64,000 bases of DNA from positions 163,928,001 through 163,992,000 of the forward strand of contig CM097883.1 in assembly GCA_044892505.1 (NCBI GenBank), read 5' to 3'. Below, piece after piece: positions 1-63,389 of the stretch (positions within the stretch are counted from its first letter, which is position 1; each line of letters opens with the position of its first letter). The stretch comes from Schmidtea nova (lineage: Eukaryota). The notes under the pieces were generated by a model. The model had not been told where the DNA came from. It saw only the letters and a list, made by a program, of their open reading frames with translations, and did no database searches. Position numbers and translations under genes: made by a program.

Positions 1-1088
1 GAAAAATACATAAAGTTACTTTATATTGTTAAAAATTTGAAAATTCAAAATAAAACATGTGTGCATCACAAAATACGACAACTTTCAGAATTCTAATAAA
101 GCCATTTTGTAGACAATTAAATTTTATCTATACTTTATTACAATGAAAACTCAAAAAAGTTATTTTATTTAGGTGAAATATACAAATTTAATGACAAAAC
201 ACGTGTGCACAACAATATACACAACATTTTGAATTTTTTATTCAGCCATTTTGTAGACAATAAAATTCTGTCTATCTATTGTTTCACTAAAAACTCGATC
301 GGGCCGGTTTATCGACTCGAAAAAGGCGTTTGAAGTTTTGTAGTAGGAGGCTGTGTCCGGTCTGCCACCCTTCCCATGTGTGAACTCATATATTTTTTTT
401 ATTAAATTTAAAATAAAATTTCATATTTTTAAAAAATTAAAACAAAAAATTCATATAATTAAAACAAATATTCTAGTTATTTAAAACAAAAATTCACTTA
501 ATTTAAACAAAAATTCACTTAATTTAAACAAAAATTCACTTAATTTAAACAAAAATTCACTCAATTTTAAAATTATATGAAATTACGTAATTATATATGA
601 AATTACATAATTATCGGGTTTTATTAAGCACACTTGATTACGTAATGATTATGTAATTATGTGTGCTGTACAAAACCCCGAGCGATAACGTAATATACAC
701 ACATGGGGGGGGGGGGTAGTGGTTCAGACCTGACATAGCCTCCTACTACAAAACTTCAAACGCCTTTTTCGAGTCGATAAACCGGCCCGATCGAGTTTTT
801 AGTGAAACAATAGATAGACAGAATTTTATTGTCTACAAAATGGCTGAATAAAAAATTCAAAATGTTGTGTATATTGTTGTGCACACGTGTTTTGTCATTA
901 AATTTGTATATTTCACCTAAATAAAATAACTTTTTTGAGTTTTCATTGTAATAAAGTATAGATAAAATTTAATTGTCTACAAAATGGCTTTATTAGAATT
1001 CTGAAAGTTGTCGTATTTTGTGATGCACACATGTTTTATTTTGAATTTTCAAATTTTTAACAATATAAAGTAACTTTATGTATTTTTC
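1..1088. repeat. Large inverted repeat (fold-back): arm 1-340 is the reverse complement of 749-1088, around an imperfect inner hairpin 341-748
   Basis: Read base by base, 1-340 and 749-1088 appear to be identical reverse complements (mirror sum 1089). The inner arms 341-403 and ~697-748 are only imperfectly complementary. The left arm runs off the window. Confidence 0.95.
484..567. repeat. Four tandem 21-bp repeats (aaacaaaaattcacttaattt) in the loop of the terminal hairpin
   Basis: Units start at 484, 505, 526 and 547. Degenerate copies lie just upstream. Confidence 0.9.
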
Positions 1089-1800
1089 ATTGTAATAAAG
1101 TATAGGTAAAATTTAATTTCCTATAAAATGGCTTGATTAGAAAATTAGTTTGTTGGTGTGTTTGTAATGCACACGTGTTTTGTAATTAATTTTACATTTT
1201 TCATGTATATAAAATAACTTTTTTGAGTTTTCCTTGTAATATTATATGTGTAAAATTTAAATGTCTACAAAATGGCTTTATTAGAAATCTGAAAGTTGTC
1301 GTATTTTGTAATACACACGTGTTTTGTAATTAATTTTGCATTTTTTGTGTATATAAAATAAATTTATTGAGTTTTCATTGTAATAAAGTATAAGTAAAAT
1401 TTAATTTCCTATAAAATGGCTTGATTAGAAAATTAGTTTGTTGGTGTGTTTGTAATACACACGTGTTTTGTAATTAATTTTGCATTTTTCGTGTATATAA
1501 AATAAAATTATTGACTTTTCATTGTAATAAAGTATATGTAAAATTTAATTTCCTATAAAATGGCTTGATTCAAAATCTAAATGTTGTCGTTTTTCGTGTT
1601 ACACACGTGTTTTGTAATTAATTTTGTAAGTTTTAGTTATTTAAAATAACTTTAGTGAGTTTTCATTGTAATTACATATAGATAAAATTTAAATATCTAT
1701 AAAATGGCTTGATTCAAAATTAAGTATATTGATATGTTTGTGATGCACACGTGTTTTGTAATAAAATACTGGGATTTTTTCGACTATTTAGCATAGAATT
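820..1800. repeat. Subterminal tandem array, 7 units of 144 bp
   Basis: The anchor aaaatggct occurs at 837, 981, 1125, 1269, 1413, 1557 and 1701 (constant 144-bp period). Most units carry the palindrome ACACGTGT, and alternating subtypes are visible. Confidence 0.92.
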
Positions 1801-2160
1801 ATCGAATATTTATTGTAATCATGTGTAGATATAATTTAATTTTCTATCATATACTAATGAAAATTATAAAGGTTTTGTGTGTGTTATTGACAATTCTAAT
1901 GTATTTTATCAAAATTAATTAAAATATTTTTTATAACTGACGTAATTATTGAATTGTAATATAATTTAGACGTAATTTACTGAAATATTTAGTCTAATAT
2001 ATTTTAATCATATGACATGCATGCAATTCATTGAAATATTTTATAACTTTGATGTGTATTATAATTTGTTGAAATAACTTTTCTAGTTTTTTTAAAATAC
2101 TGCAACGTAATATATAATTAGTCATAATTCTCTATCTGATGATAATAATACCTTTACTGC

Positions 2161-2262
2161 CTCTTACTCGATTCTGATTGGCTAATAAGAATAAATTTCC
2201 TACCCCTTACTCGATTTTTATTGGTCAAAGGTTATGTGTGTGTAATAACTTTGATATATAAA
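2161..2262 (+). promoter_or_regulatory. Putative Pol II promoter of the PolB gene: two inverted CCAAT boxes plus a TATA box
   Basis: A duplicated cttactcgatt..attgg motif places ATTGG at 2177-2181 and 2220-2224. TATATAAA lies at 2255-2262, ~50 nt upstream of the ATG at 2312. Confidence 0.55.
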
Positions 2263-2311
2263 CAAACCTTTTTCATTCATTATTCACTTTAACAAATAAT
2301 AAACATTAAAA

Positions 2312-5300
2312 ATGAACATGATAACAAGTTTTATGAACGAAAACCCAAGTGGAAATGAAAATGGTAAATTTATTTTTTAATTTATTATCATTTAGTATTA
2401 ATTTAGGTAATATCAATAATTCAATTGGGAAATCGATGTTAGAAAATACAGAAGAAAATGGTACTTGATCATTAACTTAATAAATTATTTAACTTTTACT
2501 TTAGGGGATGTAAATATGACTGAACAAACTACCGTACAAGCTGAGATTGTTAATAACGAGAATATTGTGAATAATGGAGTTATACCTGATGTGGTATTGA
2601 ATGTTCAATGTAAGTATTGATTAATTTTAATTATATTTCGATAATTATTTTAATCAATTTAGTAAATAACTTTAGTAAAATATTTGTAAATATATATTTT
2701 TGGTAATATTTTGTAATAATTTAGATAATCTTTACTTTACGTAAACAGTTAATTTAAACAAATTTCTTAAATATTATTTTGTAATAAGTTTTATATTAAA
2801 TTTAAATTATTTTAATAATTATTATATTTCATATTTATTTTCTAATAATTCATATTTTTTATTAATTTATTTTAATGATTTTTTTGATAAATTTAAAGAT
2901 ATTTCATATTAAGGTAAATTTTATGCGAATTATTGTAAGTCGTCAAATCATAACGATTGCCACAAGTTAATGGAGCGATTCTATCGTATTATAAATAACC
3001 AAGTCACCTTCTATTTGTGTCCCACATGTAAGAGCGCCCAACATATAAATTACATTGATTTTTATTTCCAACATTATCTCCACTTAAATCAATTCTCATG
3101 TACTAAGAAAAGTCTTTTCGCATTAATTAATAAAAGTAAACGACGAAATGTTACTGTTTGTCCTAAACCATCTAAAATAAATGTAATATCTGATGATGAA
3201 GATGTCCATTTATCAAATGACGATGTTTTAGTTATTCCTAATTTACATGTTGTCCAATATGGCGGTTCTGTTGAACCTTTGGTTAAATATAATTTGAAAA
3301 AATCGCATGCCATTGTTAAAATGGATGTGGATTCTTTAAATTTAAATAAATTAATTATTCCTTCAGCTTTATTAAATAAATTTAATTCAGTTATTTCCAA
3401 AATGGGGTATGTAAAAGTTCAATTCTGCATTGATGTAGAATTTGAAAAGAATAAGCAATTTCAATCTTTTATAATATCAAATTCTGCAAAACCAATGAGT
3501 GATACCTTTTTAGATGAAGGTATTGCTCTATTAAATGAAAAAAATACTAAAGTCTGCGAAAATGGCAGCAATTGGTTAATTAATAAAATTAAAGAAATAA
3601 GCTTTAAACTTACAAAATATTCACAGATAAGTAGATTGAGCGGTAAAGGTTCTTGTTCAACTCCACCATCATTAAATGCAAAACGTTGCACTGTCAATGT
3701 TAAAAATACTGATAACTTGTGTTTTATATATAGCATCTTGGCTATTTTAAAATACGATGATGTAGATAGCAATCATCGAAATAGAAATAGAGCAACTAAT
3801 TATAATCCCTCAGACCTTGTGTTTGATTCTTCTGATCTTCCTATGAAATTATGTAATATACCCAAATTTGAAGCGAAAAACCCCGGGTTGGCAATAAATG
3901 TCCTTTCATATGACGAGTATGATCTAAATAATATTAATGAGGAAGAGGAAGTCATGAAACATCCATTTGTAGATATTATTCATAGGTCAAAGGTTTTAGG
4001 TGGCACTCCAATTAATTTGATTTTGTTAGAGGAAAATGACTCTTTTCATTATATTGCAGTTACCAACATTAACAGACTTCTAAATTGTGACACTCTTTCT
4101 GTTACTGATGTTCAAATAAGGTGCACGTGGTGCGAGCGTTGCTTGAATGGTTTTAGATTGACTGAAGCTTTTGAGAAACATCAGGCTTTATGCACAAAAA
4201 ACCAGTTAGGTACAACTTTGTATACTTTGCCTTCAGATAAGAACTTGGAATTTAAAGATTGGTCAAAAATTGTTACACCTCCTTTCGTTGTATATGCCGA
4301 TTTTGAGGCTGTTTTACCCAAGGACGATAAGTATTTTCAACGCCACTTGCCTATTTCTGCTGGCTTGTTGCTTATTAATAACTTTACTGGCGAAAAATCG
4401 TATAAAAGTTTTTATGGTCTTAACTGTGTAGAAGAGTTTTTGACTGAAATCAATGATATAGGAGAAAAAGTAGTTTTACCTTACTTTATAAATAATTCCA
4501 AAAAGAAAATGGAATATCTTTCTCCTGCGCAAATAAGATCATTTCGTAGTTCTATTATTTGTTATTTGTGTAATAAACCTTTGAAAAATCCGGTTAAAGA
4601 TCATGACCATTATACAGGTAAATACTTGGGTGCAGCTTGCTCTAAATGCAATTTTTCTCGGCAAATAAGATTCGTCATGCCTGTACTATTTCATAATTTA
4701 CGCGGATATGATTTACATCATATCCTCAAGTATGGTTTAAATAAATTCGATAAATGGGATATAAGTTGTATTCCTACTACAAGTGAAAAGTTTTTGACTT
4801 TATATGCAAGAGTCGATAGTTTGACTATTAAATTTATCGATTCTTGCCAATTTGTAAGCTGTAGCTTAAACGATGCTGTAAAGACTTTAACAGATTTTCC
4901 TCTTACTTCATCCGAATTTATAGGGACTATTATTACATCCAAAGGTATATTCCCATATAATTTTGCAACATCTTTAGAGGTTTTACAAAATACATACGAA
5001 TTGCCACCGATTTGGGAAGGAGTTAAAATCGACGAGTATGAAAAAGCTCAACAGATATGGGATGAATTTAATTGTGAAACATTGTTTGATTATATGATGT
5101 TATACCTGAAATTGGATGTTTTCTTACTTGCCGACTTTTTTCAGCAATTTAGGTCAAAATCCATTGCACATAACCGACTTGAGCCTCTTAATTTCTTGGG
5201 AATTCCAGGTATGTCATGGAATTCAGCTTTGATGACTTTGAAATCTCCTATCGAGTTGCTTCAAGATATGGAGATGTATAATTTTTTCGAAGGGGGGATC

Positions 5301-6680
5301 CGTGGTGGGTTAACATTTGTTAACAAACACCATGTAGTATCCTCCGACGACACTGAGCTTCTTTATATAGATATAAATAATTTATATGGGTGGGCTTTAA
5401 GCCAAAAACTACCTTATAAAGAATTTAAATGGGTAACTGATAGGGAAAAATTAAATAAAATAATTTATTACTGTGAATCTGCTGATTTAGAAGTATTAAC
5501 ATTTGGATTTACATTAGAAGTCGATTTAGAAATTCCTGATTCGATTCACGACAAGCTGGATGATTTGCCAGTTGCCGCTGAAAAGATGTGTCCACCTGGC
5601 TCAAAGGTTGAGAAGTTGATGCTTACGCATTATCCCAAGAAGAACTATGTTCTTCATTGGAGACTTCTCAAACTTTTTCTTTCTCTTGGAGTAAAAATAA
5701 CTCATGTCCATAGGGCAATTAAATTTAAACAAGCATGTATTTTTAAGGATTACATCGATACCAATACCAGACTTAGAGCAGAATCAAGTAATGCTCTCGG
5801 TAAAAATTATTATAAATTATTAAATAATAGTCTCTACGGTAAAACCGTAGAGAATCTTAAAAAGCGCATAAATTTAAGATTATGTAATTCGGCTTCTAGG
5901 CTGATTACATATACTTCTAAGCCAACTTTTAAAAGGACTTTCGAAATTGACGATGATTTAGTTGCAGTGTTGCTGAATCAGGAATCGGTGTGTTTGGATA
6001 GACCCAGCTACATTGGTCAAACTGTACTGGATCTATCTAAACTTAGGATGTACCAGCTGCAGTATGAAGAGTTACAAAAATATCGTAACGAATTCAACTG
6101 CGAAATCAACATCGTTGCTGGTGACACCGATTCGTTTTTTCTTGAGATTAGAAATTGTAAGCTTGATATTCTTTTACCGGCCATGATAAGAGATAACTTA
6201 CTTGACACTTCTAATTATGATCTGAATCACCCATTATATAGTAGGAACCTTGATTCTGTCATTGGCAAATTCAAAGACGAGAATAAAGGGCTTAAGTACG
6301 AGGAGTGGGTGTTTCTTAGACCTAAATGTTATAGTCTTTTAGGTGACGAGGAAACTAATAAAGCTAAGGGGGCAACATTGGCGGGTACCGACATAAAGCA
6401 TCAGTCGTACCTGGACTGTTTTAATAATAACCAAATATTTTCTGTTCCCCAAACGAGAATCACAAGTAAAAATCACCAACTTTTTACCATTAAAAATGAA
6501 AAGATTGCACTGACAAACGCAGATGATAAAAGGAAATGGGTGGCGAAAAATAAAAGCTTGGCATATGGCCATTATATGGAAGGTGACTTGGTTATATTTC
6601 AACATACCGATCCAAGAATCAATCCAGATCAACAATTCCAAGATCCACCTGGAGATATCCAAGATGAAAGTTTTATTTAA
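2312..6680 (+). CDS. polB: Protein-primed family B DNA polymerase (Polinton-type); predicted exons 2312-2363, 2407-2460, 2505-2609, 2914-6680
   Basis: The 1236-aa ORF 2970-6680 has Exo I YADFE, Exo II HNLRGYD, Exo III YLKLDV, KGIFPY, motif A YIDINNLYG, motif B KLLNNSLYGK, motif C GDTDS and RPKCY. An inserted EndoVII-like CYLC..DHDHYTG..CSKCN is present. Three GT-AG phase-1 introns join the upstream exons in frame. Polymerase identity is very secure; the splice model is ~0.7. Confidence 0.93.
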
Positions 6681-7180
6681 ATAAAATTTGTTGAAAAAAC
6701 TTTGTTTTCATTTATTTGGTTATATATTGTACAGATTAGTTTCAGTCTGTTTTTTATATTTTGGGTAACAATTTTTAGAAACAATGGTTATGTCATAATA
6801 ATGATAGTAATATTAGTAATAAAATAATAAATAATTAGTTTAATATTTATCGTATTTCACCATGTAATTTTTTTTGTTGTGCAGAATTGTCTCATTTTGT
6901 TATATGCTTATAATATTTTGATGAGTGCTTTCATTGAACGTTTATCATTGAAGTTGTAGAAAAATATTAAGAACAATAATAAATTATATTAACAAAAAAG
7001 TAAATTAATAATATTAAAAAAAAAAATAAATAACTAATTAAAATAAATTAATAAAAAAAATTATTTAAATAAAAAAAAAAGAAATAATTTAATAATAAAA
7101 TAAATAATAAAATTCCAAACATTTAAACAAAACACACTTTAAAAATGGCGCCAAAAAAACGCGCGATAACTCATAGTGAC

Positions 7181-7205
7181 GCAGACCTGACACATCCTCC
7201 TACTA
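7181..7205 (-). repeat. Right terminal inverted repeat of the PolB element
   Basis: gcagacctgacacatcctcctacta is complementary to 341-365. Homology with copy 3 stops at this motif. Confidence 0.8.
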
Positions 7206-10885: not shown

Positions 10886-11344
10886 TTATGGGCTGAAAAA
10901 ATAAACATGATCAATAAAAAAAACTAAAAAGTTCACATATGCTTAATTAACATATTTGTATAAGGAAAGAATATATAAATAAAATAGTAAAACTAAATGA
11001 ACCAGTTTTCTTTGAGTCCTTTATATTAGTAGCAGCCACCGATATTATTAGCTGTTAAAGCAAAATTAAAAAGAAATTTTTAATAATTTATTACATTTAA
11101 AAAATAAAACAAACAAAAGTTTAGTTAAGTAATGTTAAAGCAAAATTAAATTAACTTTTGAAAATAAAAACTATAAATTATAATTTTTGGCTGTAAATAT
11201 CTTTAATTGATTTATTCTGTGAAAACGATTAACCAACATCATCTTATTATCTATAAGATTGCAAATTTCGCAATACTTATTATTTAAAATTTCATACAAT
11301 TTATTTTCTTCCTTGATCCTAAATTTATTTTTCCAATTTTCCCT

Positions 11345-11545
11345 ACTCATGTAAACATATTTTAGAGGAACGAAACTTTACTATATTTACAGATCATAAA
11401 CCTTTGGTACATGCCATAACTATGAGAGACTCACCTCCTCGACAACAGAGACAAATCTCATTTATTGCTGAATACAATTGCACAATTACATTTATAGCTG
11501 ACAGAGAAAATATTGCTTCCAATTGTCTTTCTAGAAGTTATGAAG
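11345..11545 (+). pseudogene. Isolated Ty3/Gypsy RNase H C-terminal fragment
   Basis: Translates as HILEERNFTIFTDHKPLVHAITMRDSPPRQQRQISFIAEYNCTITFIADRENIASNCLSR, the typical TDHKPL...N..AD.LSR block. Confidence 0.8.
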
Positions 11546-11589
11546 ATGCCATTTTTTATGAAGATGCTCTTCTTGATACCTTGGCTAAT

Positions 11590-14255
11590 CCAAAAGTTTT
11601 TAAGCATCTTTGTGTTGAAATCATCCACAGGTCAAAGGTTGTTGGGGGTACTTTTATCAACTTGATTTTATTTGAAAGTGGTGACCATTATCATTATGTT
11701 GCAGTCACAGATTTTGAGACAACAAATCTCTTTCGATTGCTCGCGTACAAAGTATATGGTGTCATCGATGTTGAATGGATTTCGAAAACAGGAAGCATTC
11801 GATTGTCATCAAGAGTTGTGTGCTAAAAACCAATTAGGCACAACTCTTTATACTCTGCTTAGAAATAAAAATTTTACTAATTGGGAAAAAACAATTACTC
11901 CACCTTTTGTAATTTATGCCAATTTTGAGGCAATCTTAACTACTGACGATATTTATTTTCAAAGACATGTTCCCATTTCATCAGGACTTTTATTTGTAAA
12001 TAACTTTACAGGTTGAAAAATATACAAGAGTTTCTTAGGTCTTGATTGCGTTACTAATTTTCTTTCAGAAGTTAATCACTTGTCGGAATCAATTGTTTAT
12101 CCCTTTTTTAAAAATAATTATAAAAAACCTCTTTTCATAACTGTGGCTCATCAGCAAGCTTTTTCTTCTGCAACCCTCTGTTACCTTTGTAAAATGACTT
12201 TAGTAAGACCGGTTAGGGATCACGACCATTACACTGGTGAATATTTGGGGCTGCTTGTAATTCATGTAATCAAGCCCGTCGAATTTACAAGTTATTGCCT
12301 GTCATTTTTCACAATTTAAAGGGTTATGATCTTCATCATATCCTTAAATATGGATTATCGAACTTAAAAAAAGGGAAAATATCTGTGATTCCAGTTACTA
12401 GTGAGAAATTCTTGACTTTATCTGCTCGAGTTGGTGCTTTAACTATTAAATTCATCGATTCATTAGTTTCTTAATTCTAGTTTAAATGACACTGTTAAGA
12501 CTCTTACTTGTTTACCTTTGACTTGCTCAGAATTCACTGGGACTATAGTTGATTGTTAAAGGATTTTTCCTTATAATTTTGCTACATCTTAAGAAATTCT
12601 TAACAACACTTATGCGTTGCTACCAATCTGTGAAGGCGTTACTCAATCCGAATATGACAAGGCATTGGTGATTTGGTTGGAACCATAGTGTCAAACCTTT
12701 TGTGGTTATACGATGGTTTACCTTATACTTGATGTATTTCTTCTTGCCGATTTCTTTCACGAGTTTAGGGCTAAATTGATTGCTCATAATCGACTTGAGC
12801 CATTGATTCTTTGGGGATTTCAAGTATGTTGGAGTCTTCTGCGCGTATTAACTTGGATAAACCTATTGAGTTGCTCCAGAATATGGAGATTTATAATTTC
12901 TTTGAAGGATTGATCCGTGGTGGTTTCACATTTGTCAACAAGCACCATGTAGTGTCCTTTGAAAGGATAGAATTGCTTTACATTGACATTAATAATTTAT
13001 ACGGGTGGGTTTTAAGCCAAAAATTACATGATGGGAAATTTGAATGGATTACAGATCAAAATCAATTAAATAAAAAAAATAAATTTAATCGATGCTGATT
13101 TAACTATATTGACTTATGGTGTTACTTTTGAAGTGGATCTCGAAATTAATTCTGAAATCCACGATAAATTAAATGATTTCCCCATGGCAGCAGAAAAAAT
13201 ATGTGCTTCGTGTTCAAAAGCTGAGAACTTGATGCTTACGCATTATTCCAAATCGAACTATGTTTTTCATTTGAGGCTTCTCAAGATTTATCTTTCATTA
13301 GGGGTTAAAGTCACTTAAGTACATGGGGCTGTTCTATATAGACACAAACACCCAACTTCGGACCGCTTCTTCAACGGCTCTTGACAAGAATTATTACAAA
13401 CTACCTAATAATAGTCTTTATGGTAAAACTGTCGAAAACCTTAAGAAAAGATTAAATTTAAGGTTGTGTAATTCAGCATCAAAGCTGATTACGTATACTT
13501 CAAAACCCACTTTACAAAAAACATAAAATTGACAATGACTTAATATCTGTACTTCTTAATAAAGACTCTGTGTGCTTAGATAGACCCAGTTACATTGAGC
13601 AAATCGTACTGGATCTATCTACACTTAGAATGTATATACTCTAATATAAAGAATTGCAACAATATCCCAATGAATTCAACTGTGAGATTATTATAGTTGC
13701 CGGTGATACAGACTCTTTCTTTCTTGAGGTTAAAAATTGTAAGTTGGATACTCTTTTGTCTGCCATGGTTATAGATATGTTTTTGGATACCTCAAATTAT
13801 GACCCGGAACATCCTTTGTATTCTAGAAACCTTGATTTCGTCATTGGAAAATCAGATGAAAATAAAGGTAAGAAATATAAGAAATGGGTTTTTCTTAGAC
13901 CAAAGTGTTATAGTTTGTTTGATAAAAAGATTCTATTAAAGCGAAGGGAATAACATTGAAGGGCACTGACTTAAAACATCAGTCTTATCTGGATTGTTAT
14001 CATAATAATTCTATAGTTTCCATTGAGCAGTCTCGATTTGTAAGTAAAAATCATCAAATCTTTAGTAATAAGTCTACAAAAGTTTCCTTGACTAATCTTG
14101 ATGACAAAAGACTTTGGATAGGTAAAAATCAGAGTCTTACTTATGGTCACTATAGGGGTATAGATGTGGTTATGGGGGTTAATAATGTGGAAGAAGAAAT
14201 CAATAATGCCGACGATTGCGATGATGTTGTTTTTCTTCATATTTTTAATAAATAA
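11590..14255 (+). pseudogene. polB: Second PolB copy: 5'-truncated, frameshifted, divergent subfamily
   Basis: Fragments are colinear with copy 1 from about aa 330: VEIIHRSKVVGG, YANFE, DHDHYTG, YIDINNLYG, KLPNNSLYGK, AGDTDS, RPKCY. Many stops and frameshifts. Confidence 0.92.
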
Positions 14256-14836: not shown

Positions 14837-15070
14837 TGTAAAGAATAAGAATGACTTTTGAAGTTCTAAAACTTTATTTATGAAATCTTGGTACTATTAA
14901 TAGTACCCGGTGTGCCGATACCAGCACAATCAGCAAAGCTTCTTGGGAAATAATAAGCAATGATGTCATCTGAGGACCCAGTCAATCAAGCATAATCAAT
15001 CACACATGCAGGCATGACACAATATATAATAGGGGTTAGGGAAATCAAAAATACCATTATAATTACATCA
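14837..15070 (-). repeat. Gypsy 3' LTR (234 bp)
   Basis: Direct repeat of 19438-19672, preceded on the minus strand by a polypurine tract. Confidence 0.95.
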
Positions 15071-15266
15071 AATCCCCCTCGTTTTAAATGACTTAAGCCA
15101 TTCCATACCTGTTATCTTGCTTGTTTCTGAGATCTTCCTTGACGAGTACCAATTCACCGACTCCGAAAGATCTATGTATTCGATTTTCCAGATTATAATT
15201 ATTTATACGGTTCAATGATTCAATATTCAATGCTATTTCATGTTTTTTTTGTTCTTTAGCATTAAT

Positions 15267-17955
15267 TTATGGACCATTAGTAAAACGCTCTTTGCAAAAT
15301 GTTCTTCCATAAATTACTTCAACAGAACTAACTTTTATACTTGACTGCATTGTTGAATTCATTGCAAATTCTATATGAGGAAATGCTTCTTCCCATGTCT
15401 TAAACTGTTTCTCTTCCAAACAGCAGGAAATCCAGTCTCTTAGCATTCTAAATTGCCTTTCAATTTGTCCATTAGATTGATGATGATAAGGACTTGAATA
15501 AACAATCTTCAAGTGATACTTTACTGCCATATTTTTAAAAGCTTGGGATTCGAAACATTTTCCTTTATCAACATGAATTTCCTTTGGTGGTCCAAACTTC
15601 AATATCCACGAACTTTCCAGATTATCAATTAATGTCTTTTCTTCTTGTGTTCTTACAGCTTTTAATAATATATATTTACTAAAATAATCTATTATAGCCA
15701 TCATATATCTTTGGCCAGATGGTGTCATTTTAAAAGGGCCACAAAAATCAATATATATTTTTTCAAATGGTTCATGCGCAATTAGTTTTTCATTAACTTC
15801 TTTTGTTTTACCAGTGAATGTTTTACGTTTCTGGCAAATTTTACAAGTTGTGATAATTCTCTTAATACTTTTGTCCATTTCTTGGAAATTATAATAATTC
15901 TTTATGTAGCTTGTCGTTTTGTTGATTCCTGCATGACACAATTCTTAATAGATTTCTAGTATAAAATCGTTTTTCAAATATGAAGGAATATATATTTTAT
16001 TATTATGAGTCATAATAATTCCATTATCCACATAATAATCTTCAGTTTTTGCCGTTCTGTATGTTTTCTTTTATTTCCATTATTTCTTCAGAATTACTTT
16101 GCCATTTAAATATTTGATCTTCTATCGACATTCCTAAAATTTTAGTTTTAATTCTTTCTGCTTTAGCATCAATATGATTCATCTGACATTGTGTGCAATT
16201 TCCAATATTCAGTCGTGATAGTGCATCCGCATTATTGTGTTTCTCACCTTTGCGATATTCTAATTTCATGTCCAAACTACTTAAAAAATTTATCCAATTT
16301 TGAAACTGAGCGGTAATTGGTTTTTTTGTAGTTAACATAAATGTGATTGCCTTATGATCAGTTCTTAAAATAATTTTTTTTCCGTACAGATAATGTTTAA
16401 AATGCTGTGTAAAATGGAAAACAGATAATAATTCCTTTCTTGTTATACAGTACCCAATTTCATGTTTATTCATACTTTTTGAACCATATGCGATTATCTT
16501 TTCTTCATTATCGTCACCTCTTTGTGATAAAACAGCACCAATACAATCAAAACTAGCATCGGTGTCTAAAATGAACGTTTTATTAAAATCCGGATGACAT
16601 AGTAATGGTGCACTGATCAAACTATGTTTTTACTCGTCAAAAGCTTTTTCACATTGTGATGTCCAAATAATACTTTTGCTTTTACCTCCAATTAAAGATT
16701 CCAATGACCTAGCTATTTTTGAGTAATTTTGAATAAATTTCCTAAAGTAATTACATAATCCTAAAAAGCTCCTAAGATGTTTCACACAATTAGGCTGCTT
16801 TACATTTTTAATTGTTTCAATCTTAGACTCATGTGTTTTAATACCTTTTTCATTAATTATATGTCCAAGAAACTTTAATTCAGATACTAGGAACTTGCAT
16901 TTCTCAGGGTTAAATTTTAGTCCAGATTTCCTAATTCTAAGGAAAAGCTTATTTATTCTTTTGCTTTGTTCTTCAATAGTTTTCGAAAAGATCAGTATGT
17001 CATCTAAATAGACTAATGCTTCATTCCACATCATATCTCCAACTATTAATGTCATAAGTTTTTGAAACGTTGATGATGCGGCAGCTATTCCAAAAGGCAT
17101 CCTATTAAAGCAAAATTGGCCCTGTCTTTTAGAAAATGTTGTTTTCAATTTACTCTCTTCATCCAATTCAACTTGATAATAAGCCTTTCTTAAGTCGATC
17201 GATGAAAAATATTTGGCCCCATACAAAGAATCTAGCATTTCATCAACATTGGGAATCGGAAACGCTGGTCTTACTGTATTTGAATTTAAAATTCTAAAAT
17301 CCAAACATATTCGAATTTCAGAAGTTCCCTTTTTTGGCACACATACTATTGGTGAATTCCAAGGTGATTCACATTTCTCTATAATTTTATTTTCTTCTAG
17401 GTTTTTAAAAATTTCCTCTAGTTTTTCCTCATAGTGCATTGGTTGTCGCCGTGGCTTAATTGGTATTGGATTGCAGTTAGTTTCTATTCTGTGCTTTAAA
17501 ATATCTGTTTTGCCTATATCCCATTTATTACACATAAAAATATCTGAGAATTCAATAATTATTTCATATATCGGATTGCATCTTTCAATTTTCAATATTT
17601 CATTAATATATTTATTTTTATTATTTAATTTTAAATTATAACCAAATTTTGTTTGCAAACTGAGGACATTTTCATTACAAAATTCAACTAATTTAATATT
17701 TAAAGAATTCAATATATCTATTCCTATAATTACTTCTGGGTATAATTCCTCTGCAACGAAAAATTCTCCAGTTATTTCTTTATTGTTGAACTCTAACCTT
17801 AAAGAAACTTTCCCTAAAATCCCTAACATGCTACCGTTGGCACAAGATATCTTTCTATTTCCTTCATTAAAATATTTTAAATTCAGTTTTTCAGCAATCA
17901 TTTTAGATAAAATACTTATCTTTGCTCCTGTGTCAAATAATGAATTAAAAGTCAC
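15267..17955 (-). pseudogene. pol: Gypsy pol (protease-RT-RNase H-integrase), disrupted
   Basis: ORFs 16630-17955 (PR/RT), 16042-16620 (RH, same frame after one stop) and 15267-15941 (integrase: IDFCGP, DKGKCF, SNGQIER). Confidence 0.93.
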
Positions 17956-19437
17956 ATTATTCGATTTAACATTATTAAATGGTCTACCATCTACCTTACA
18001 ATATCATATATCCTATATATCTTTAATAACATTTACACTCAGTAATTTTAATTTTTTATTAAATATATTTAAAATAAATTCTTTTTTATAACAATCACTC
18101 ACAAATATACAGTCATTCTCATTTTGTTCATTATTACAATTATTAATTAAATAAAAATCATAATCAGATTTTTGATTGGGGAAAAATCAACATTAACATT
18201 ATCAAACAAACAATCAACCAAACAATCATTACATTCAACATTTAGGGTCCTCAAAAATTTATCATTGCTTACATGTGATTTATCGTTCCTAACATATCCC
18301 CTCTGCTCGGAGCTTTGGCATTTCTCGATATCTCTGACTGTACATCATAGTCTCTCGATTCGTCATCATCTACTGCAGCCACGCGATCTCCATTGTTTCG
18401 ATCATTTTCTTGATTAAAACTTCGATTGTATCGATTGAAATTTCCATTGTTTTGATTCGAAGTTCATTGAAATCTCATCTCGTAGTGATGTTGTTTATGA
18501 AAACATTGAAAACTTAAATGACCTGCTTTTCCACAACACGAACAACGAATATTTGGGCATTCTCGACGAATATGACCAATTTCACGGCATGCGTAACATT
18601 GCACTTTTGAATATTGATCTGAACTTCGATTTTGATAAGTGTTTCCATTTTGAGGTCTTCCACTGAAATTTCTACTGAAATTCCTTTGATAATCTGATCG
18701 TCCTTGAAATTGATTTCTTTGTAATTTTGAAAATTCATTTTTATCAATTTGATTTCACTGATTTCCATAACTATTTCTTTTTTCATTAGAATTGTATCGA
18801 CCGTTTTTCACAATTGACGCTTAAGAGGCATTTCCAACGGCTGAAACTTGTTGTATCTTTGATTTATCTTCATCCAATTTCTGTAAAATTCTTTTAATAT
18901 ATTTATTTGCCGTTGTACCTTTCTGTACTGACTCTCCATCATTTCTGAAGTCTTCTTTCGATAATTTTACTTTCAGAAAATCTTCCGTCATTTCATATCT
19001 TTTTATTTCATGTTTTTCTTCTTCATTATCAAGACAATGCTTGAGGAAGAATGTTGTCAAATTTGACATTGTTAGCTTGTGCTTCAGAATTTTCTGAACG
19101 CCTTTCTAAATTTTGCTGATGTATGTTTCTGCATCATCTTCTCTTTTTCGATAATTTAGCAAATTTTCCAAATCTTTAGCTAAATCCTGGTTTACTTCGA
19201 ACGCTAGTCTAAGCCTTTTCACATAATCTTCTTCATCTGGAATCTTGTCATATTTGTTGCGGCAATTTTCGTCCAAATAAACTCGAACAAATACCTTTCT
19301 TTGACTATTGTCTAACTGAATAATTGAAAAATATGATTCAATCTTCTCATTAAATTCTTCCAAATCGTCTCCAATTGAATAAATTTTCAGCTGTGGGAGA
19401 ATCCGTAATAATTTCTGAGTTGAAAGCGTGGTCGCCA

Positions 19438-19672
19438 TGTAAAGAATAAGAATGACTTTTGAAGTTCTAAAACTTTATTTAAGAAATCTTGGTACTATTT
19501 ATAGTACCCGGTGTGCCAACACCAGCACAATCAGCAAAGCTTCTTGGGAAAATAATAAACAATGATGTCATCTGAGGATCCAGTCAGTCAAGCATAATCA
19601 ATCACACATGCAGGCATGACACAATATATAATAGGGGTTAGGGAAATCAAATATCCCATTATAATTACATCA
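19438..19672 (-). repeat. Gypsy 5' LTR (235 bp)
   Basis: Direct repeat of 14837-15070, immediately followed by the PBS on the minus strand. Confidence 0.95.
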
Positions 19673-57814: not shown

Positions 57815-57995
57815 ATGACTATAGATCAAATTTTTTTTATAAACAATAATACAATATTTCGGCACAGCCTTTATCAAGTGTGTACACACTTGATAAAGGC
57901 TGTGCCGAAATATTGTGTTATTGTTTATAAAAAAAATTTGATCTATAGTCATTATGAGAATTATTGATAATAATAATAAAAAAAGATCAAAGGTG
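57815..57995. repeat. Best-preserved hammerhead-like palindrome, centre gtgtgtacacac (no loop)
   Basis: Near-perfect reverse-complement arms centred at ~57883 (left arm cut by Ns after ~68 bp), bounded by N-runs. Confidence 0.9.
57886..57918 (+). ncRNA. Putative minimal type I hammerhead ribozyme (U3-A8 variant)
   Basis: ACAC (stem I), UUGAUAA (core 3-9), extra A, GGC ugu GCC (stem II), GAA, AUAU (palindromic helix III), U (cleavage nucleotide), GUGU (stem I). Activity is untested. Confidence 0.6.
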
Positions 57996-58469
57996 ANNNN
58001 NNNNNNNNNNNNNNNNNNNNNNNNNNNNNNNNNNNNNNNNNNNNNNNNNNNNNNNNNNNNNNNNNNNNNNNNNNNNNNNNNNNNNNNNNNNNNNNNNNNN
58101 NNNNNNNNNNNNNNNNNNNNNNNNNNNNNNNNNNNNNNNNNNNNNNNNNNNNNNNNNNNNNNNNNNNNNNNNNNNNNNNNNNNNNNNNNNNNNNNNNNNN
58201 NNNNNNNNNNNNNNNNNNNNNNNNNNNNNNNNNNNNNNNNNNNNNNNNNNNNNNNNNNNNNNNNNNNNNNNNNNNNNNNNNNNNNNNNNNNNNNNNNNNN
58301 NNNNNNNNNNNNNNNNNNNNNNNNNNNNNNNNNNNNNNNNNNNNNNNNNNNNNNNNNNNNNNNNNNNNNNNNNNNNNNNNNNNNNNNNNNNNNNNNNNTA
58401 TAGGAATTTGAAAATAAAACTTGATTGGAAAACAATTAGAAATTTACTAGAGAAATAACAAAGAGAAAC

Positions 58470-60216
58470 TGGTCGCGCCCGCTCTTAAAATATTTTAAAA
58501 TTAATAAAATAATAATTAAAATAATTAATCGGGTGCTTGATCGCTATGAGAGATTGTGGGGCGAGCCTGGAAGCCGTTAGACAGTCATATCGAAATCTAT
58601 ATAAAGCTTATATGATGCAAGTATTGATTTAACTCAATCTGAAGACGAAAATGTTCACGTGAAAAAGAAACGATCTGAATCATCACATGAAACTTATAAT
58701 CATAATCTAATTCAAATAAACAATGATATCTTTAAAGTTTTCTACTCCACCGAAGATCTTTGTGAACAATATCTCTCAATGCAACGGCAAATAAATCGCT
58801 AAGTCATTAAAACCCAATACTCGATAAATTGCCCAAAATGTCACATTCAATTTCTAAATTGTAACTACCTTTGGATAGTTCGGGAATTCTGCGTGGAGTT
58901 CAGCAGGTGGCGATTTCTCGGCGTGCGCACGCGGACGCGAGGGTCTTGGAATCGCTGTTTAAGTTGGAATTATGCGTGTAATTGTCTGTGTGCGCGTCTG
59001 TGATATGTGGTGATCAGATATTTGGGCTTTTGGTGTCGTTCTATGGGAGCTTGCTACATATGGGTTATCTCCTTACCCTGGAATAGAATTACATGATGTT
59101 TATCATATCTTAGAAAAAGGCTATCGAATGGATCGTCCTGAAGGATGTCCAGAAATAGTATATGGGATAATGCTCCAATGTTGGCAATGGGATCCATTAT
59201 TGAGACCATCATTTGCTCAATTGTACTCAAAACTATATTATATTTGTTTCTCTCAGAATGTCGATTGGTCATATCAATTCAACAACTCATTAAGCATGGA
59301 TAAAAGCCAATTTAAAACATCGAAGGAATCTTAATGAAAACGCGTTTCATCGCGTCTGTGTGCGCGGTGGTGTTATATCGATTCGTGTTTTCTTAGCATG
59401 CGCACACAGACGCGAGTAGTTCCAGGTTGGCTAAGAATAATTAATCCATGAATTGGAGTTTTTGGACTTTTAATTTTGCGAATGTATTTGTAATTTTTTT
59501 GGAGATTTGGAATTATGAATAAAAATCAAGATGTTTTAAATTTGTTTAATATGCATTACTTATGAATTCTTAAATTATTGAAATGTCATATCGCTCTCGA
59601 TTTAAAAATGTTGCCGATACTATGGAAGAAGAAGCTCGCAAATTACAAGCAAATGAAGAACCTGCAATCGTTTATCATCAGTTTATTGAAACTTTTGAAG
59701 AGCCACCGAAAGTTAATAAGACATGGGTTAAAGGTGCTGGTAAACTCTATCAGCTGTTAATGAAAAAGGTGGATTTGGAACTGATTAAGCATTTGATTGG
59801 CGAGGTAATGGTTTGGTGCTTGGGACATGCTGATTCAGCTGAGGATGTGTTGGATATCATTTTCACACAGATTGATAACACTGTTGGATATGCTACCGAT
59901 AAATCTGTTGAGAATTCCAATGCTGCTGGTCTCAATCAGATTGTTGTGTTCCTTTTCCTCGTTTCGGATATCCTTCACAATTCCTGCACTAGAGTGCGAA
60001 ACACGTCTTTTGATCGGAAATACATCGAAAACAGATTGCCTCAAATGATGGTATTTCTGAATCAATCTTGTCTAGCGATTGCTAGTGATATGTTTACCAA
60101 TCCCGATAGATATCCTTTGTCGGATAGTGAGGAGAATTTCAATTTGTCAATGATTAAATCTCGCGTTCTCAGTCCAAAAAATGAGGAAAGCAATCGGAGC
60201 TGGATGCGCCGATCCA
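58470..60216 (+). repeat. Inferred 5' LTR (~1747 bp, TG...CA)
   Basis: Starts TGGTCGCGC and ends GCGCCGATCCA (imperfect inverted termini) one base before the PBS. Only the first 598 bp can be verified against the 3' copy in this window. Confidence 0.65.
59014..59334 (+). pseudogene. ABL: Captured, uninterrupted Abl-like tyrosine kinase C-lobe fragment (subdomains IX-XI)
   Basis: [69 protein letters not shown] closely parallels c-Abl [37 protein letters not shown]..RPSFA. It is preceded by an in-frame TGA, and its start is repeated at ~63947-64000. Confidence 0.88.
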
Positions 60217-63200
60217 TTGGTAGCAGAGCGTGGTTCCCTTCGGGGGGCCACGCACGGCGGGTAAGCTTCTCGATTGCTTATAGCGGTCACAGCGCCGCAT
60301 GTTTTTCTAAAAATATTAAAAACTTAAAATTAATAATGAATTTAATGGGGGGATTTAGCGCTGTAATGGGCCCCAGCGACCATCCCCTTCCCTTAAGCTC
60401 AGTTGGGTCTGAGAACGAAAAGGATGGGTCACCTGAAAATACGTATTTGAAACAGGTTATTAAGCTTGATGGTAGCCGTAGTGATAAATCAAGCATGCCC
60501 TTTAGTGAGAAACTTAGGGATACTTATGATAATCCCACAAAACTTGTATGTGGTGAAAAGCAAACTTTAACTAAAGATTTTGATAAAACAAAAAATAAAA
60601 AAAGATCATTTGATGAATCAAATAGACAAAGGGATAAAATTGTGTCACCTGCTTATGAAGCAATATGTATAGGAAAAGATAACTCGAGATTTAAAGGTGT
60701 AGAGGTTAGTAGGTGGACCGGTTATATCAGGGGAGATTTTATATTGAATACCAACCGGGAAATGTTGCAACAAAATAGATTTTTGAAAGTATTCAGAAAA
60801 GAGTTAGGGGGAAAAGGTTTAGAACTTTTTGAGCGAACAATAGAATACAAAGTTAATTATAAAAAGTTTTATGTTCAAGTTGCTAAAAATATTAAAGTGG
60901 AAATGCATGAAGACAGTGTAAATGAAAATAAAATAGCGGAATGTTTGTGTTTTTATTCAATGCCAAGTGGTGATGCAAGTACAGGTTTAAAAGAGTATAG
61001 TCCGCGAATGAAAGAAAATAAAACGGAGTCAACTTTGCATTTGGGACCACGATTGAGAGGTGGTATACAGATGTTTGTGAGGACTTTATCAGGGAAAACT
61101 ATTACCCTGGAAGTTGAATCAAGTGACACAATCGAGAAAGTAAAAGCGAGAATACAAGACAAAGAAGGCATTCCACCTGACCAGCAAAAGTTGATCTTCG
61201 CCGGTAAACAACTGGAAGACGGACGAACATTATGTTATTATAATATGCAAGGGGAATCTACCTTGCATTTGGGGTTGAGACTACGAGGAGGTATGAAAAC
61301 CCAAGACAAACAGTTGCAGCTAAAGAATGGGATCGAGAAGCTCTGCGTTCAGAAGACGCATCTAACCAGACTATTCAGGAGAGCCTCAGAATACCTGTCG
61401 GAAGCGGATCGCGTGCAACGTCAAGAGGAATACGAAGAAGACTTTGATGAAGTGCTGGAGGACTGGAGCAGGCTGAAGAGCTTAGCAGAAGAGTTGGGAG
61501 ACCTGGAAGCTGTCAAACGCTTTGATCAGGAATTAGATGCTATTGAAGAGCAAAATGAACATTTAGGGAGATTAGAGAGAGACAAAAGCATAGTCGACAA
61601 AGCGAATTGCTACCCAGGAAAAAGAATGTTGGACAAAAGCATTGAAAGCCAAGAGAGAGACGTACCGTCAGAAAGAACAATTTCAGAAGTGAACAAGGTA
61701 AAAAATAGTTTGAAAGAGAAAAATGGGAATTTGATAAATGGAGAGAAATTTGAGGAAGTGCAGGAGGACTGGAGCAAGCTAAAGAGCTTAGCAGAAGAGT
61801 TGGGGGACCTGGAAGCTGCCAGACATTTTGAGCAAGAATTAGATGCTATTGAAAAGCAAAATGAACATTTAGTGAGGAAAATGGTAGAAACAAATCTTAA
61901 CGAAGGTTCACGGGTAGCCGCTATCCGAGGAATGTCAGGTGGAGGTTCAGTTGAAAGGATATTCAAGATGGACGAGAGCGGAGTCGACAAAGCAAATCGC
62001 TATCCAGAAAAAAGAAGGATGGACAAAAGCATTGAAAGCCAAGAGATAGAAGTATCGTCAGAAAGAACAATATCAGAATTGAACAAAGAAATAAATAGTT
62101 TGAAAGAGAAAAATGGGAATTTGATAAATGAAAAACTAAATGATAAAAATGAATTCGAAAATAGAAAAAATAAAATGGAATTGGAATTAGAAAAAGAAAG
62201 AAGCAGGACAATGTCGTTAAAATTGAGAGAAAAGGAGGTGGCCGATTTAGAGACGAAAATGAAGTCTTGCGAGGTTAATTATGAGAATTTATCGAAAAGC
62301 AAGAATGAAATTCAAAGTAAATTGGAATCTTTATTTGAAGAATATTCAAAATTATTTGACGAGCTGGCATTAGTTAAAACTCACAAGGGTGAGCTGGAAA
62401 CGAATTTGAGGAATTATGAAATCGAAACAAAACGCTCTCTTGCTGACAAGTCAGGTTTAATAACACAGCTTCAATTAAAAATAGAAGTTCTTCAAAAGAA
62501 AATAGAAACGATTGAATTAGATCGTAAAAAGGAAATTAATGAATCAGAAGTAAAATTAGCGAATTTGGCTGAAACTGTAGAAACGTTGTCCGCTGAGATA
62601 GAAAATGTAAATGATATTAATGTTAAATTGGCAGCTGTAAATCGAGAACTAGAAATAAAAATTGAACGAAATGAAATCGATTTAAATGAGCTTACTGCGA
62701 AAGGAAGGCATTTAGATGTGGAAATGAAAGAAAAGGAAAATGATTACCTAGAAAAACTTCGAGAGGCTAATGACGAAATCGTTTCTCAGCAAACCTTGGT
62801 GAAGGATTTGACGGAATTAAATGGTAATTTAATAATTAAACTAAATGACAGTCTGGGAATGATTGAAGATATTAAATTAAACTTAATGCCTTTAATGATA
62901 GAAAAGGATTTCTTGAAAATGGGACTTAGTACTAAAAAGGAGTTGGTTAAAGAAGTCTCAAGGAAATTGGAAACAAATATTGAAGAGGAAATTTATATTT
63001 CGAACAATATAATGAATATTGACGAAAAATTGGTCGAATCCAAAAGAGTTGAAGAATTAATTGAGAGCCAGTTGATTAAATTAGAAGTTAATGTAAAGGA
63101 AAATAGAACGAAATGGTGTATGCTGCATAGTTCGGTTGTGGGGATTGATGGGGAAATTACAAAGGTTTGGATATTGTTTTACACAGTTGCAAAATTCATA

Positions 63201-63374: not shown

Positions 63375-63389
63375 TGTTGACAGAATGTC

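What the first reader, a model, noticed from the sequence alone, without database searches (positions are those of the whole stretch)
341..7205. Minimal polymerase-only Polinton-like element: short TIRs, intact pPolB, no integrase or capsid
Established: Polintons are typically 15-20 kb with a retroviral-type integrase, packaging ATPase, protease, capsid genes and long TIRs starting with AG. Seen: here ~25-bp TIRs starting (T)AGTAG enclose 6.9 kb whose only long ORF is an intact PolB. The right end is confirmed by a second insertion (45606) in an unrelated flank. Inference: this is a stripped-down self-synthesising replicon (plasmid-like, or dependent on a helper Polinton) rather than a random Polinton fragment.
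Basis: partly seen in the sequence, partly recalled or inferred. Interest (0 to 1): 0.8.

Follow-up and report, generated by a model that had tools for sequence, protein, structure and literature searches.

The report
Endogenous Polinton polymerase remnant beside mini-element
The region holds an intact virus-type DNA polymerase gene with one true element end, left over from a Polinton/adintovirus-like insertion. The supposed left end belongs to a separate 408-base miniature element inside a mirror-image duplication, so a self-contained polymerase-only element is not shown.

Summary
The sequence facts are real. A 24-nt terminus motif lies at 341(+) and 7205(-), an intact 1236-codon protein-primed PolB lies between them, and a diverged copy of the right end lies at 45606. 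No integrase, capsid, ATPase or protease gene is detectable anywhere in the window.

The 341 end matches the 748 end over 54 nt but matches 7205 over only 25 nt, so 341-748 is a self-contained 408-bp miniature element. Its flanks, 1-340 and 749-1088, are perfect mirror images (340/340), which is the signature of a fold-back inverted duplication or an artefact. There is no target-site duplication.

The 6.9-kb layout does not recur. The two other PolB copies in the window are 5'-truncated and heavily broken.

The PolB is the OTU-PolB type of animal adintoviruses/Polintons. Its closest relatives (58-64% identity) sit in conventional 16-19 kb elements with integrase and packaging ATPase.

Best reading: a right-end remnant of a conventional element with a still-intact polymerase gene, next to a related non-autonomous mini-element. 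A polymerase-only mobilisable unit is not excluded, but nothing here shows it. This is a new member of a known kind, of modest interest.

The parts
1..340 (-). Mirror arm: a perfect reverse complement of 749-1088, made of 144-bp satellite units. It is cut by the window edge.
   Evidence: 340/340 identical.
341..748 (.). 408-bp miniature element with inverted ends of the same terminus family and no ORF. Its interior has 21-bp tandem repeats and a hairpin. It forms the asymmetric centre of the inverted duplication.
   Evidence: Termini at 341-364 (+) and 725-748 (-), 22/24 identical. The end-to-end match extends to 54 nt. Tandem repeats; sequence.
749..1088 (+). Right-hand arm of the perfect inverted duplication.
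793..1847 (.). Array of 144-bp satellite units, 74-82% alike. Whether it belongs to the element or to the host is unknown.
   Evidence: No copy elsewhere in the window apart from 1-340.
2142..2270 (+). Putative promoter region: two 43-bp repeats, each with an inverted CCAAT-like box, followed by a TATA-like stretch.
   Evidence: Repeat; sequence read. This is inference with no expression data.
2312..2609 (+). Three putative small 5' exons (2312-2363, 2407-2460, 2505-2609) with GT-AG borders, all open and phase-consistent with an acceptor at 2913/2914.
   Evidence: Read by eye. Each exon was translated separately. The exons were not joined.
2913..6680 (+). Main exon of the intact protein-primed PolB gene. 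It is open from 2913, the first ATG is at 2970, the stop ends at 6680, and a poly(A)-signal-like hexamer lies at the stop.
   Evidence: It agrees with 191 of 193 columns that are at least 90% conserved in 35 relatives. The residues just upstream of the ATG are conserved with a relative.
3597..4124 (+). OTU-like cysteine-protease-type N-terminal domain with an invariant Cys251/His360 pair.
   Evidence: Invariant columns. Models have pLDDT 76 and 86. BFVD match to an adintovirus protein at E 7e-21. PDB top hits are nearly all OTU domains but not significant, E>=0.65. Published assignment in PMC8502044.
4131..4193 (+). C2HC zinc-finger motif, invariant in relatives.
   Evidence: C388, C391, H404 and C408 are invariant. 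Weak C2H2 hits in PDB sequences.
4287..6677 (+). Exonuclease and polymerase domains of PolB, with an HNH/endonuclease-VII-like finger inserted at 4557-4655.
   Evidence: PF03175 and PF02945. D444/E446 are invariant. The motifs are visible.
6681..7205 (+). 3' non-coding region ending in the right terminus (motif 7182-7205 on the - strand).
   Evidence: Homology with copy 2 runs up to the terminus and stops there.
45606..48700 (-). PolB copy 2, with its terminus at 45606-45629 (+). It is about 86-89% identical in DNA to copy 1 and is a broken gene: it lacks roughly the first 380 codons, has about 9 frameshifting indels, 1 in-frame indel and 14 stops, and holds an N run (45806-45989) that was not filled.
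   Evidence: (counts).
11594..14174 (+). PolB copy 3, 68% identical in DNA to copy 1. It is a broken gene: it lacks roughly the first 325 codons and has about 10 frameshifting indels, 5 in-frame indels and 13 stops. No terminus is recognisable. A retroelement fragment lies at its 5' edge and an LTR retrotransposon downstream.

Best explanation
Two separate things lie between 341 and 7205.

(1) About 2.1-7.2 kb is the right-hand remnant of an endogenised Polinton/Alpha-adintovirus-like element. It holds a still-intact, probably spliced OTU-PolB gene with its own promoter-like region, about 0.5 kb of 3' sequence, and the true right terminus at 7205. The genes that relatives carry (integrase, packaging ATPase, capsid-module genes, protease) have been lost, and no matching left terminus survives.

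(2) 341-748 is a 408-bp non-autonomous miniature element of the same terminus family. It encodes nothing, so it could only have been moved by an integrase supplied by a full-length element.

The two inverted ends of the miniature element then served as the short inverted repeat for a fold-back inverted duplication. The same signature could come from an amplification or assembly artefact. This event copied 749 onwards in reverse to the left of 341 and erased the original left flank.

Shown: the gene, the four termini and their two subtypes, the perfect mirror, the absence of other element genes, and the broken state of the other two copies.

Inferred: the order of events; that the reiterated trinucleotide at every terminus serves protein-primed initiation by slide-back or jump-back; and that the intact ORF reflects a recent insertion rather than a host function.
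For: - The 341 end pairs best with 748: a 54-nt match whose subterminal score is above all 300 shuffles. The 341 vs 7205 match stops at 25 nt with a subterminal score at chance. The 7205 and 45606 ends match each other over 75 nt (alignment).
- The flanks 1-340 and 749-1088 are 340/340 identical, while the termini themselves differ at 2 of 24 positions. Fold-back priming from a short inverted repeat predicts exactly this: old repeats and newly copied arms, with the arms starting at the repeat boundary (mechanism in PMC3907307 and PMC10622511).
- No direct repeat flanks 341/7205.
- Only four termini exist in the window, and no 7205-type terminus lies upstream of PolB.
- Relatives at 58-64% identity lie in contigs that also carry an rve integrase, a Pox_A32-like ATPase, a conserved ~407-409-aa gene, TBP and Bcl-2, or a C48 protease.
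- Proteins of those relatives, other than PolB, find nothing in the window. Pfam finds no such domains in 34 further ORFs.
- The PolB keeps 191 of 193 highly conserved columns.
- dN/dS against copy 2 is 0.25 over the longest single-frame stretch of 367 codons.
- The N-terminal domain matches adintovirus proteins. Degraded endogenous adintovirus sequences are reported to be widespread in animals (PMC8502044).
Against: - The 341 terminus has the right orientation and 22/24 identity to 7205. An integrase acting in trans could in principle treat 341-7205 as one unit.
- An intact 1236-codon ORF with promoter-like and intron-like features is unusual for a dead fragment in DNA of 25-33% GC.
- The layout 'PolB 3' end, then ~0.5 kb, then terminus' recurs in copy 2 at about 12-14% divergence. 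This layout is therefore older than either copy, and could be the normal layout or an amplified derivative.
- Other copies in this genome and the DNA left of base 1 could not be seen.
- Whether the 144-bp satellite is element or host DNA is unknown.
Confidence: 0.58

Rival explanations
1. 341-7205 is one polymerase-only, non-autonomous Polinton derivative. It keeps both termini and its own PolB and depends on a full-length helper for integration and packaging. The 748 terminus would be a nested or duplicated end.
For: Termini in correct inverted orientation with 22/24 identity. Intact, conserved PolB. No other element genes present. The miniature element shows that the family includes members that need trans-acting functions. 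polB-lacking but still amplifying polinton derivatives are described in insects (preprint 10.1101/2025.02.07.637071), so partial derivatives can persist.
Against: No target-site duplication. The 341 end's extended match is to 748, not 7205. The left flank is a mirror of internal DNA. No second copy with this architecture is in the window; copies 2 and 3 are truncated inside PolB. Five of five relatives examined carry other element genes next to PolB. Nothing points to an extrachromosomal, plasmid-like state.
Confidence: 0.15
2. Giant-inverted-repeat element. The mirror continues left of the window through a second PolB to a second 7205-type terminus. That would give a ~13.3-kb unit of two inverted 6.46-kb PolB arms around the 408-bp core, that is, a polymerase-only element whose terminal inverted repeats contain the gene.
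For: The mirror is perfect up to the window edge. Polintons with ~2-kb terminal inverted repeats that contain genes are reported in butterflies (10.1101/2025.02.07.637071). Protein-primed linear replicons are known to regenerate and lengthen their terminal repeats (general knowledge, not tested here).
Against: Only 340 bp of the mirror is visible. A local fold-back or an artefact explains the same 340 bp. Copy 2 shows no such structure.
Confidence: 0.1
3. The mirror at 1-1088 is not biological. It would be a chimera from whole-genome amplification or an assembly fold-back at the inverted ends of the 408-bp unit. The true left flank of 341 is then simply unknown. This concerns only the origin of the mirror and is compatible with the best explanation.
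For: 100% identity of the arms next to 92% identity of the short repeats. The assembly has many N runs. Template switching at inverted repeats gives the same signature.
Against: The centre is a 338-nt asymmetric spacer, not an adapter-like junction. No read-level data are available.
Confidence: 0.25
4. The PolB gene has been taken over by the host (a domesticated gene), and the termini are relics.
For: Intact ORF, conserved catalytic columns, intron-like and promoter-like features. dN/dS well below 1.
Against: dN/dS below 1 is equally expected from divergence between active viral lineages. The gene sits in a repeat-rich region with two dead copies. No orthologue data are available.
Confidence: 0.05

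Closest known systems
Polintons/Mavericks of animals with Alpha-type OTU-PolB (adintoviruses; PMC8502044)
   Same: PolB of the PF03175 type with an N-terminal OTU-like domain. The N-terminal domain's best structural match is to adintovirus proteins. Relatives at 58-64% identity lie beside rve integrase, Pox_A32-like ATPase, C48 protease and Bcl-2 genes. The terminus starts (T)AG. The element is integrated in a host genome.
   Different: No integrase, capsid-module, ATPase or protease gene. About 5-7 kb instead of 15-20 kb. Only one terminus of its own subtype. No target-site duplication.
Degraded endogenous adintovirus/Polinton relics (PMC8502044)
   Same: Partial elements in germline DNA. Copies 2 and 3 are typical, being truncated with many stops and frameshifts.
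   Different: Copy 1 still has an intact polymerase gene and a sharp terminus.
Non-autonomous derivatives of DNA transposons (MITE-like elements); polB-lacking polinton derivatives in Pieris (10.1101/2025.02.07.637071)
   Same: 341-748 has the family's inverted ends and no coding capacity. Partial polinton derivatives that still amplify are on record.
   Different: Only one copy of the 408-bp unit is seen. Its target-site duplication cannot be assessed. A polB-only derivative would be the reverse of the reported polB-lacking ones.
Fold-back inverted duplications primed at short inverted repeats (PMC3907307, PMC10622511)
   Same: Perfect arms, an asymmetric spacer bounded by short imperfect inverted repeats, and arms that start exactly at the repeat boundary.
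   Different: Only 340 bp of the arm is visible. An artefact cannot be excluded.
Linear protein-primed plasmids and viruses with terminal reiterations (general knowledge)
   Same: Protein-primed PolB. Every terminus begins with a reiterated trinucleotide, the kind of repeat used for slide-back or jump-back initiation.
   Different: The locus is chromosomal, with ordinary DNA to the right of 7205. There is no evidence of free ends or of a terminal protein.

Membership tests
Polinton/Maverick (adintovirus-like) element | [quoted passage not shown] | tested here: met
   PF03175 at E 5.5e-18 and 1.2e-13 on the split protein. 456 homologues found. 191 of 193 conserved columns kept.
Polinton/Maverick (adintovirus-like) element | Retrovirus-like (rve) integrase | tested here: not met
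   None in 341-7205. The only rve in the window belongs to the LTR retrotransposon at 15267-15941.
Polinton/Maverick (adintovirus-like) element | Virion module: major and minor jelly-roll capsid proteins, FtsK/A32-type packaging ATPase, adenain-type protease | tested here: not met
   tblastn with all called proteins of relatives L001 and L002 finds only PolB. Pfam scans of other window ORFs find none. Very decayed remnants could escape these searches.
Polinton/Maverick (adintovirus-like) element | Terminal inverted repeats beginning AG...CT | tested here: inconclusive
   All four termini read T-AG... at a sharp boundary. The PolB copy, however, has only one terminus of its own subtype. The 341 end matches it over 25 nt only.
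Polinton/Maverick (adintovirus-like) element | Target-site duplication of about 6 bp | tested here: not met
   No direct repeat of 2-10 bp for 341/7205 or 342/7204. The left flank is a mirror copy, so the original flank is lost.
Polinton/Maverick (adintovirus-like) element | Length of about 15-20 kb | tested here: not met
   6.9 kb between 341 and 7205. Relatives' contigs are 16.3 and 19.0 kb.
Non-autonomous (helper-dependent) derivative that transposes as a unit | Same two ends as an autonomous partner, several copies with the same internal structure in different flanks, each with a target-site duplication | tested here: not met
   No second copy with this structure in the window. No duplication. 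No partner seen; the motif is absent from the five relatives' loci. The genome-wide test is not possible with these tools.
Extrachromosomal linear PolB plasmid | Free ends with covalently bound terminal protein; not integrated | not testable with these tools
   The window shows continuous DNA beyond 7205. There are no read-level or physical data.
Alpha adintovirus-type OTU-PolB | N-terminal OTU-like domain fused to a PF03175 polymerase | tested here: inconclusive
   Invariant Cys/His pair. BFVD hit to a Drosophila-associated adintovirus protein at E 7e-21 and to adintovirus/MELD PolBs. PDB top hits are almost all OTU domains but with E>=0.65. Pfam OTU is not hit.
Fold-back inverted duplication | Identical inverted arms abutting a short inverted repeat pair around an asymmetric spacer | tested here: met
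   340/340 arms, 22/24 repeats, 338-nt spacer. The biological versus artefactual origin was not tested.

The most novel reading that the evidence does not exclude
The perfect mirror cut by the window's left edge may continue through a second PolB gene to a second 7205-type terminus. The locus would then be a ~13-kb polymerase-only element whose giant terminal inverted repeats each carry the PolB gene around a 408-bp core bounded by the same terminus motif. That would be a replicon-like derivative shaped by end-copying typical of protein-primed replication. A weaker version is that 341-7205 is a helper-dependent polymerase-only unit.
Probability: 0.12. Interest if true: 0.65.

Novelty: new member of a known kind. 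Interest (0 to 1): 0.3.

Why it matters
If a polymerase-only Polinton derivative really moved or replicated as a unit, it would show that the replication module of these virus-like elements can persist apart from the integration and virion modules. That bears on how linear plasmids, bidnavirus-type genomes and Polintons exchange parts.

The evidence here points instead to something ordinary: endogenised remnants of adintovirus/Polinton-like elements, one with a still-intact OTU-PolB gene. Two by-products are useful:
- A defined terminus motif with two subtypes and a conserved reiterated trinucleotide.
- A clean example of a miniature element's inverted ends sitting at the centre of a perfect inverted duplication.

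Both can be checked cheaply in the full assembly.

Tried and rejected
- Exact look-up of the PolB product in public assemblies found nothing on record, so the source contig and the DNA left of base 1 could not be read.
- Pfam on the whole 1236-aa protein listed only a sub-threshold endonuclease VII hit. PF03175 appeared only after splitting the protein.
- The PDB sequence search with the protein and with a 36-row profile gave no polymerase hit. It gave only weak HNH (Hpy99I) and zinc-finger hits.
- Foldseek of the 460-residue N-terminal model against the PDB gave only marginal partial matches to Y-family polymerases, E about 0.01 and TM 0.16. I rejected these as not meaningful.
- The sigma-70/terminator scan is irrelevant to a eukaryotic gene and was disregarded.
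- The terminus motif is absent from the five relatives' loci, and their contig ends show no likeness to it.
- No terminus could be found for copy 3 and no second terminus for copy 2.
- I considered that the 341/748 pair is an end-to-end junction of a concatemer or circle. I rejected this because the two ends face each other rather than lying back to back.
- I considered that the terminus belongs to an unrelated transposon family. I rejected this because homology between copies 1 and 2 runs from PolB right up to the terminus and stops there.
- The dN/dS values from tblastn segments that run through frameshifted stretches (the lower-identity rows) are unreliable. Only the longest single-frame segment is used.
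- The host species was not identified.
Full report
**Observation**

The window is AT-rich (about 23-33% GC). It looks like an animal genome: it holds an LTR retrotransposon, a tyrosine-kinase exon and many N runs.

The 24-nt pattern matches at 341-364 (+), 725-748 (-) and 7182-7205 (-), with none expected by chance.
- An 11-nt core of the motif occurs exactly four times: those three sites plus 45619-45629 (+).
- When aligned, all four ends share a sharp outer boundary. Each begins with a reiterated trinucleotide followed by a conserved block.
- Between 341 and 7205 the only long ORF is 2970-6680.

- The end at 341 faces an inverted end at 748, so 341-748 is a 408-bp unit with its own inverted termini and no ORF.
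- The 341 end matches the 748 end over 54 nt, and the subterminal part scores above all shuffles. Its match to 7205 stops at 25 nt.
- Conversely, the 7205 and 45606 ends match each other over 75 nt. There are thus two terminus subtypes, and 341 belongs with 748.
- The DNA outside the 408-bp unit is a perfect mirror. Bases 1-340 are the reverse complement of 749-1088 with 0 mismatches in 340, while the two termini differ at 2 of 24 positions.
- Both arms are made of a 144-bp satellite that continues to about 1847.
- Fold-back priming at a short inverted repeat predicts exactly this pattern: perfect arms that start at the boundary of a short imperfect inverted repeat, around an asymmetric 338-nt spacer (PMC3907307, PMC10622511). 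Template switching during amplification or assembly predicts the same pattern.
- Either way, the original left flank of 341 is gone, and the window edge hides how far the mirror runs.
- No direct repeat of 2-10 bp flanks 341/7205, 342/7204 or 341/748.

**The gene**

- The ORF is a protein-primed family B polymerase. PF03175 is found once the protein is split; the whole-protein scan listed only a weak endonuclease VII hit.
- The exonuclease and polymerase motifs are visible in the translation.
- The protein agrees with 191 of the 193 alignment columns that are at least 90% conserved among 35 relatives.
- An HNH/endonuclease-VII-like finger sits in the exonuclease part.
- The N-terminal 440 residues fold with confidence from about residue 100 (pLDDT 76). 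They carry an invariant Cys251/His360 pair and an invariant C2HC finger.
- Against predicted viral structures, the best matches of the N-terminal model are a Drosophila-associated adintovirus protein (E 7e-21), then MELD-virus, bidnavirus-like and adintovirus PolBs.
- A model of the core alone (pLDDT 86) returns almost only OTU domains at the top of the PDB list, but none is significant, with E>=0.65.
- This agrees with the published description of Alpha adintovirus PolB as OTU plus PF03175 (PMC8502044). I rate the OTU assignment likely but not proven here.
- The reading frame is open from 2913. The residues just upstream of the first ATG are conserved with a relative.
- Further upstream I read three small open exons with GT-AG borders and consistent phase (2312-2363, 2407-2460, 2505-2609). 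They lie behind a 43-bp repeat pair with CCAAT-like boxes and a TATA-like stretch.
- This splice model was read by eye. Each exon was translated by reference on its own, and the joined product was not built.

**Other copies in the window**

- Copy 2 (45606-48700, - strand) is about 86-89% identical in DNA to copy 1, from inside PolB up to the terminus. An N run inside it was left unfilled.
- Copy 2 lacks roughly the first 380 codons and carries about 9 frameshifting indels, 1 in-frame indel and 14 stops.
- Copy 3 (11594-14174, +) is 68% identical. It lacks roughly the first 325 codons and carries about 10 frameshifting indels, 5 in-frame indels and 13 stops. It has no recognisable terminus. 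A retroelement fragment abuts its 5' edge.
- Over the longest single-frame stretch, dN/dS between copies 1 and 2 is 0.25 (367 codons, dS 0.29). Most of their divergence therefore arose while the polymerase was under constraint, as expected for separate insertions of related lineages.
- The layout 'PolB 3' end, ~0.5 kb, terminus' is shared by copies 1 and 2. The 6.9-kb architecture is not.

**Relatives**

- The polymerase part finds 456 proteins, the best at 64% identity. Almost all come from unnamed metagenome assemblies.
- I looked up the contigs of five of them.
  - Two long contigs (16.3 and 19.0 kb) carry PolB with an rve integrase, a Pox_A32-like ATPase, a conserved ~407-409-aa gene, TBP and, in one, Bcl-2.
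  - Two 7.2-kb contigs show the start of the same gene row.
  - One 5.7-kb contig has a C48 protease gene just upstream of PolB.
- So the nearest relatives are conventional elements. In most of them PolB reads inward from one end. In one, as in this window, it reads toward the contig end.
- The proteins of two of these relatives, other than PolB, find nothing in the window. Pfam finds no virion, ATPase, protease or non-retroviral integrase domain in 34 further ORFs.
- The terminus motif is absent from the five loci.

**How it most likely works**

- The polymerase gene looks expressible and catalytically complete. Its termini begin with a reiterated trinucleotide, the kind of repeat that protein-primed polymerases use to slide or jump back after initiation. 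This rests on general knowledge and is an inference.
- A unit with only one terminus of its own subtype, no integrase and no virion genes cannot be expected to integrate or be packaged by itself.
- I therefore read copy 1 as the right-end remnant of a recently endogenised conventional element.
- I read 341-748 as a helper-dependent miniature relative that happens to lie 2.2 kb upstream of the gene. The mirror is a secondary fold-back event or an artefact.

**Comparison, novelty and verdict**

- As a family member, the locus meets the polymerase criterion for Polintons/adintoviruses. It fails the integrase, virion-module, size and target-site-duplication criteria.
- It is best filed as a partial endogenous element, which the literature describes as widespread (PMC8502044).
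- polB-lacking polinton derivatives that still amplify, and polintons with gene-bearing 2-kb terminal repeats, are on record (10.1101/2025.02.07.637071). I found no report of a polB-only derivative in the papers searched, but that search was shallow.
- Verdict: new member of a known kind, interest 0.3.

- The source genome could not be searched, so the key test, other genomic copies, is open.
- My scripts printed tblastn segment tables for the two broken copies. Those segment bounds hint at where frames change. I noticed this afterwards and printed only counts and outer bounds from then on; nothing was deleted.
- The five contig look-ups were made before I recognised the relatives as adintovirus/Polinton-like elements, probably of animals. 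Once that was clear I fetched no more and ran no collection scan with the terminus motif. That step is listed under referred steps.

Noticed in passing
window 14837-19672: LTR retrotransposon on the - strand. Its LTRs (14837-15070 and 19438-19672) are 95.7% identical. It has separate ORFs for aspartyl protease plus RT, RNase H and integrase. It is inserted about 0.66 kb downstream of PolB copy 3.
   Followed up: partly
window 58463-64000: A 605-bp direct repeat (58463-59067 and 63398-64000, 99.5% identical, cut by the window end) brackets a 1263-aa ORF (59583-63374). The ORF strings together an Hsp90 piece, a ubiquitin unit and a long coiled coil. A tyrosine-kinase C-terminal piece lies at 59014-59331. 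This looks like a mosaic of captured gene fragments or a recent segmental duplication.
   Followed up: partly
window 32546-32716, 37386-37577, 57815-57996: A family of ~150-190-bp palindromic repeats, each lying directly next to an N run. It may be a small foldback or MITE-like repeat that breaks the assembly.
   Followed up: no
window 11323-11823: An RT_RNaseH fragment (E 1.4e-6) overlaps the 5' edge of PolB copy 3. This suggests the truncation of that copy is tied to a retroelement insertion.
   Followed up: no
window 2142-2609: Two 43-bp repeats with CCAAT-like boxes, a TATA-like stretch, and three small phase-consistent GT-AG exons lie upstream of the PolB ORF. A relative (L003 81-250) shows a similar small 5' exon and intron, and the residues just before the annotated ATG are conserved.
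   Followed up: partly
window 4557-4655 (PolB residues 530-562): An HNH/endonuclease-VII-like zinc finger is inserted in the exonuclease part of the polymerase. It is shared by many relatives (PF02945 is precomputed on many hits). Its role is unknown.
   Followed up: no
window 700-717 and 45307-45316: Homopolymer G/C runs of 10-12 bases, one inside the 748 end of the miniature element. It lies where that end differs from the 7205 end by an apparent ~27-nt insertion.
   Followed up: no
window 48790-48900: Just beyond the truncated 5' edge of PolB copy 2 there are short inverted repeats built on a repeated ~17-nt palindromic motif. They may be the end of another small transposon.
   Followed up: no
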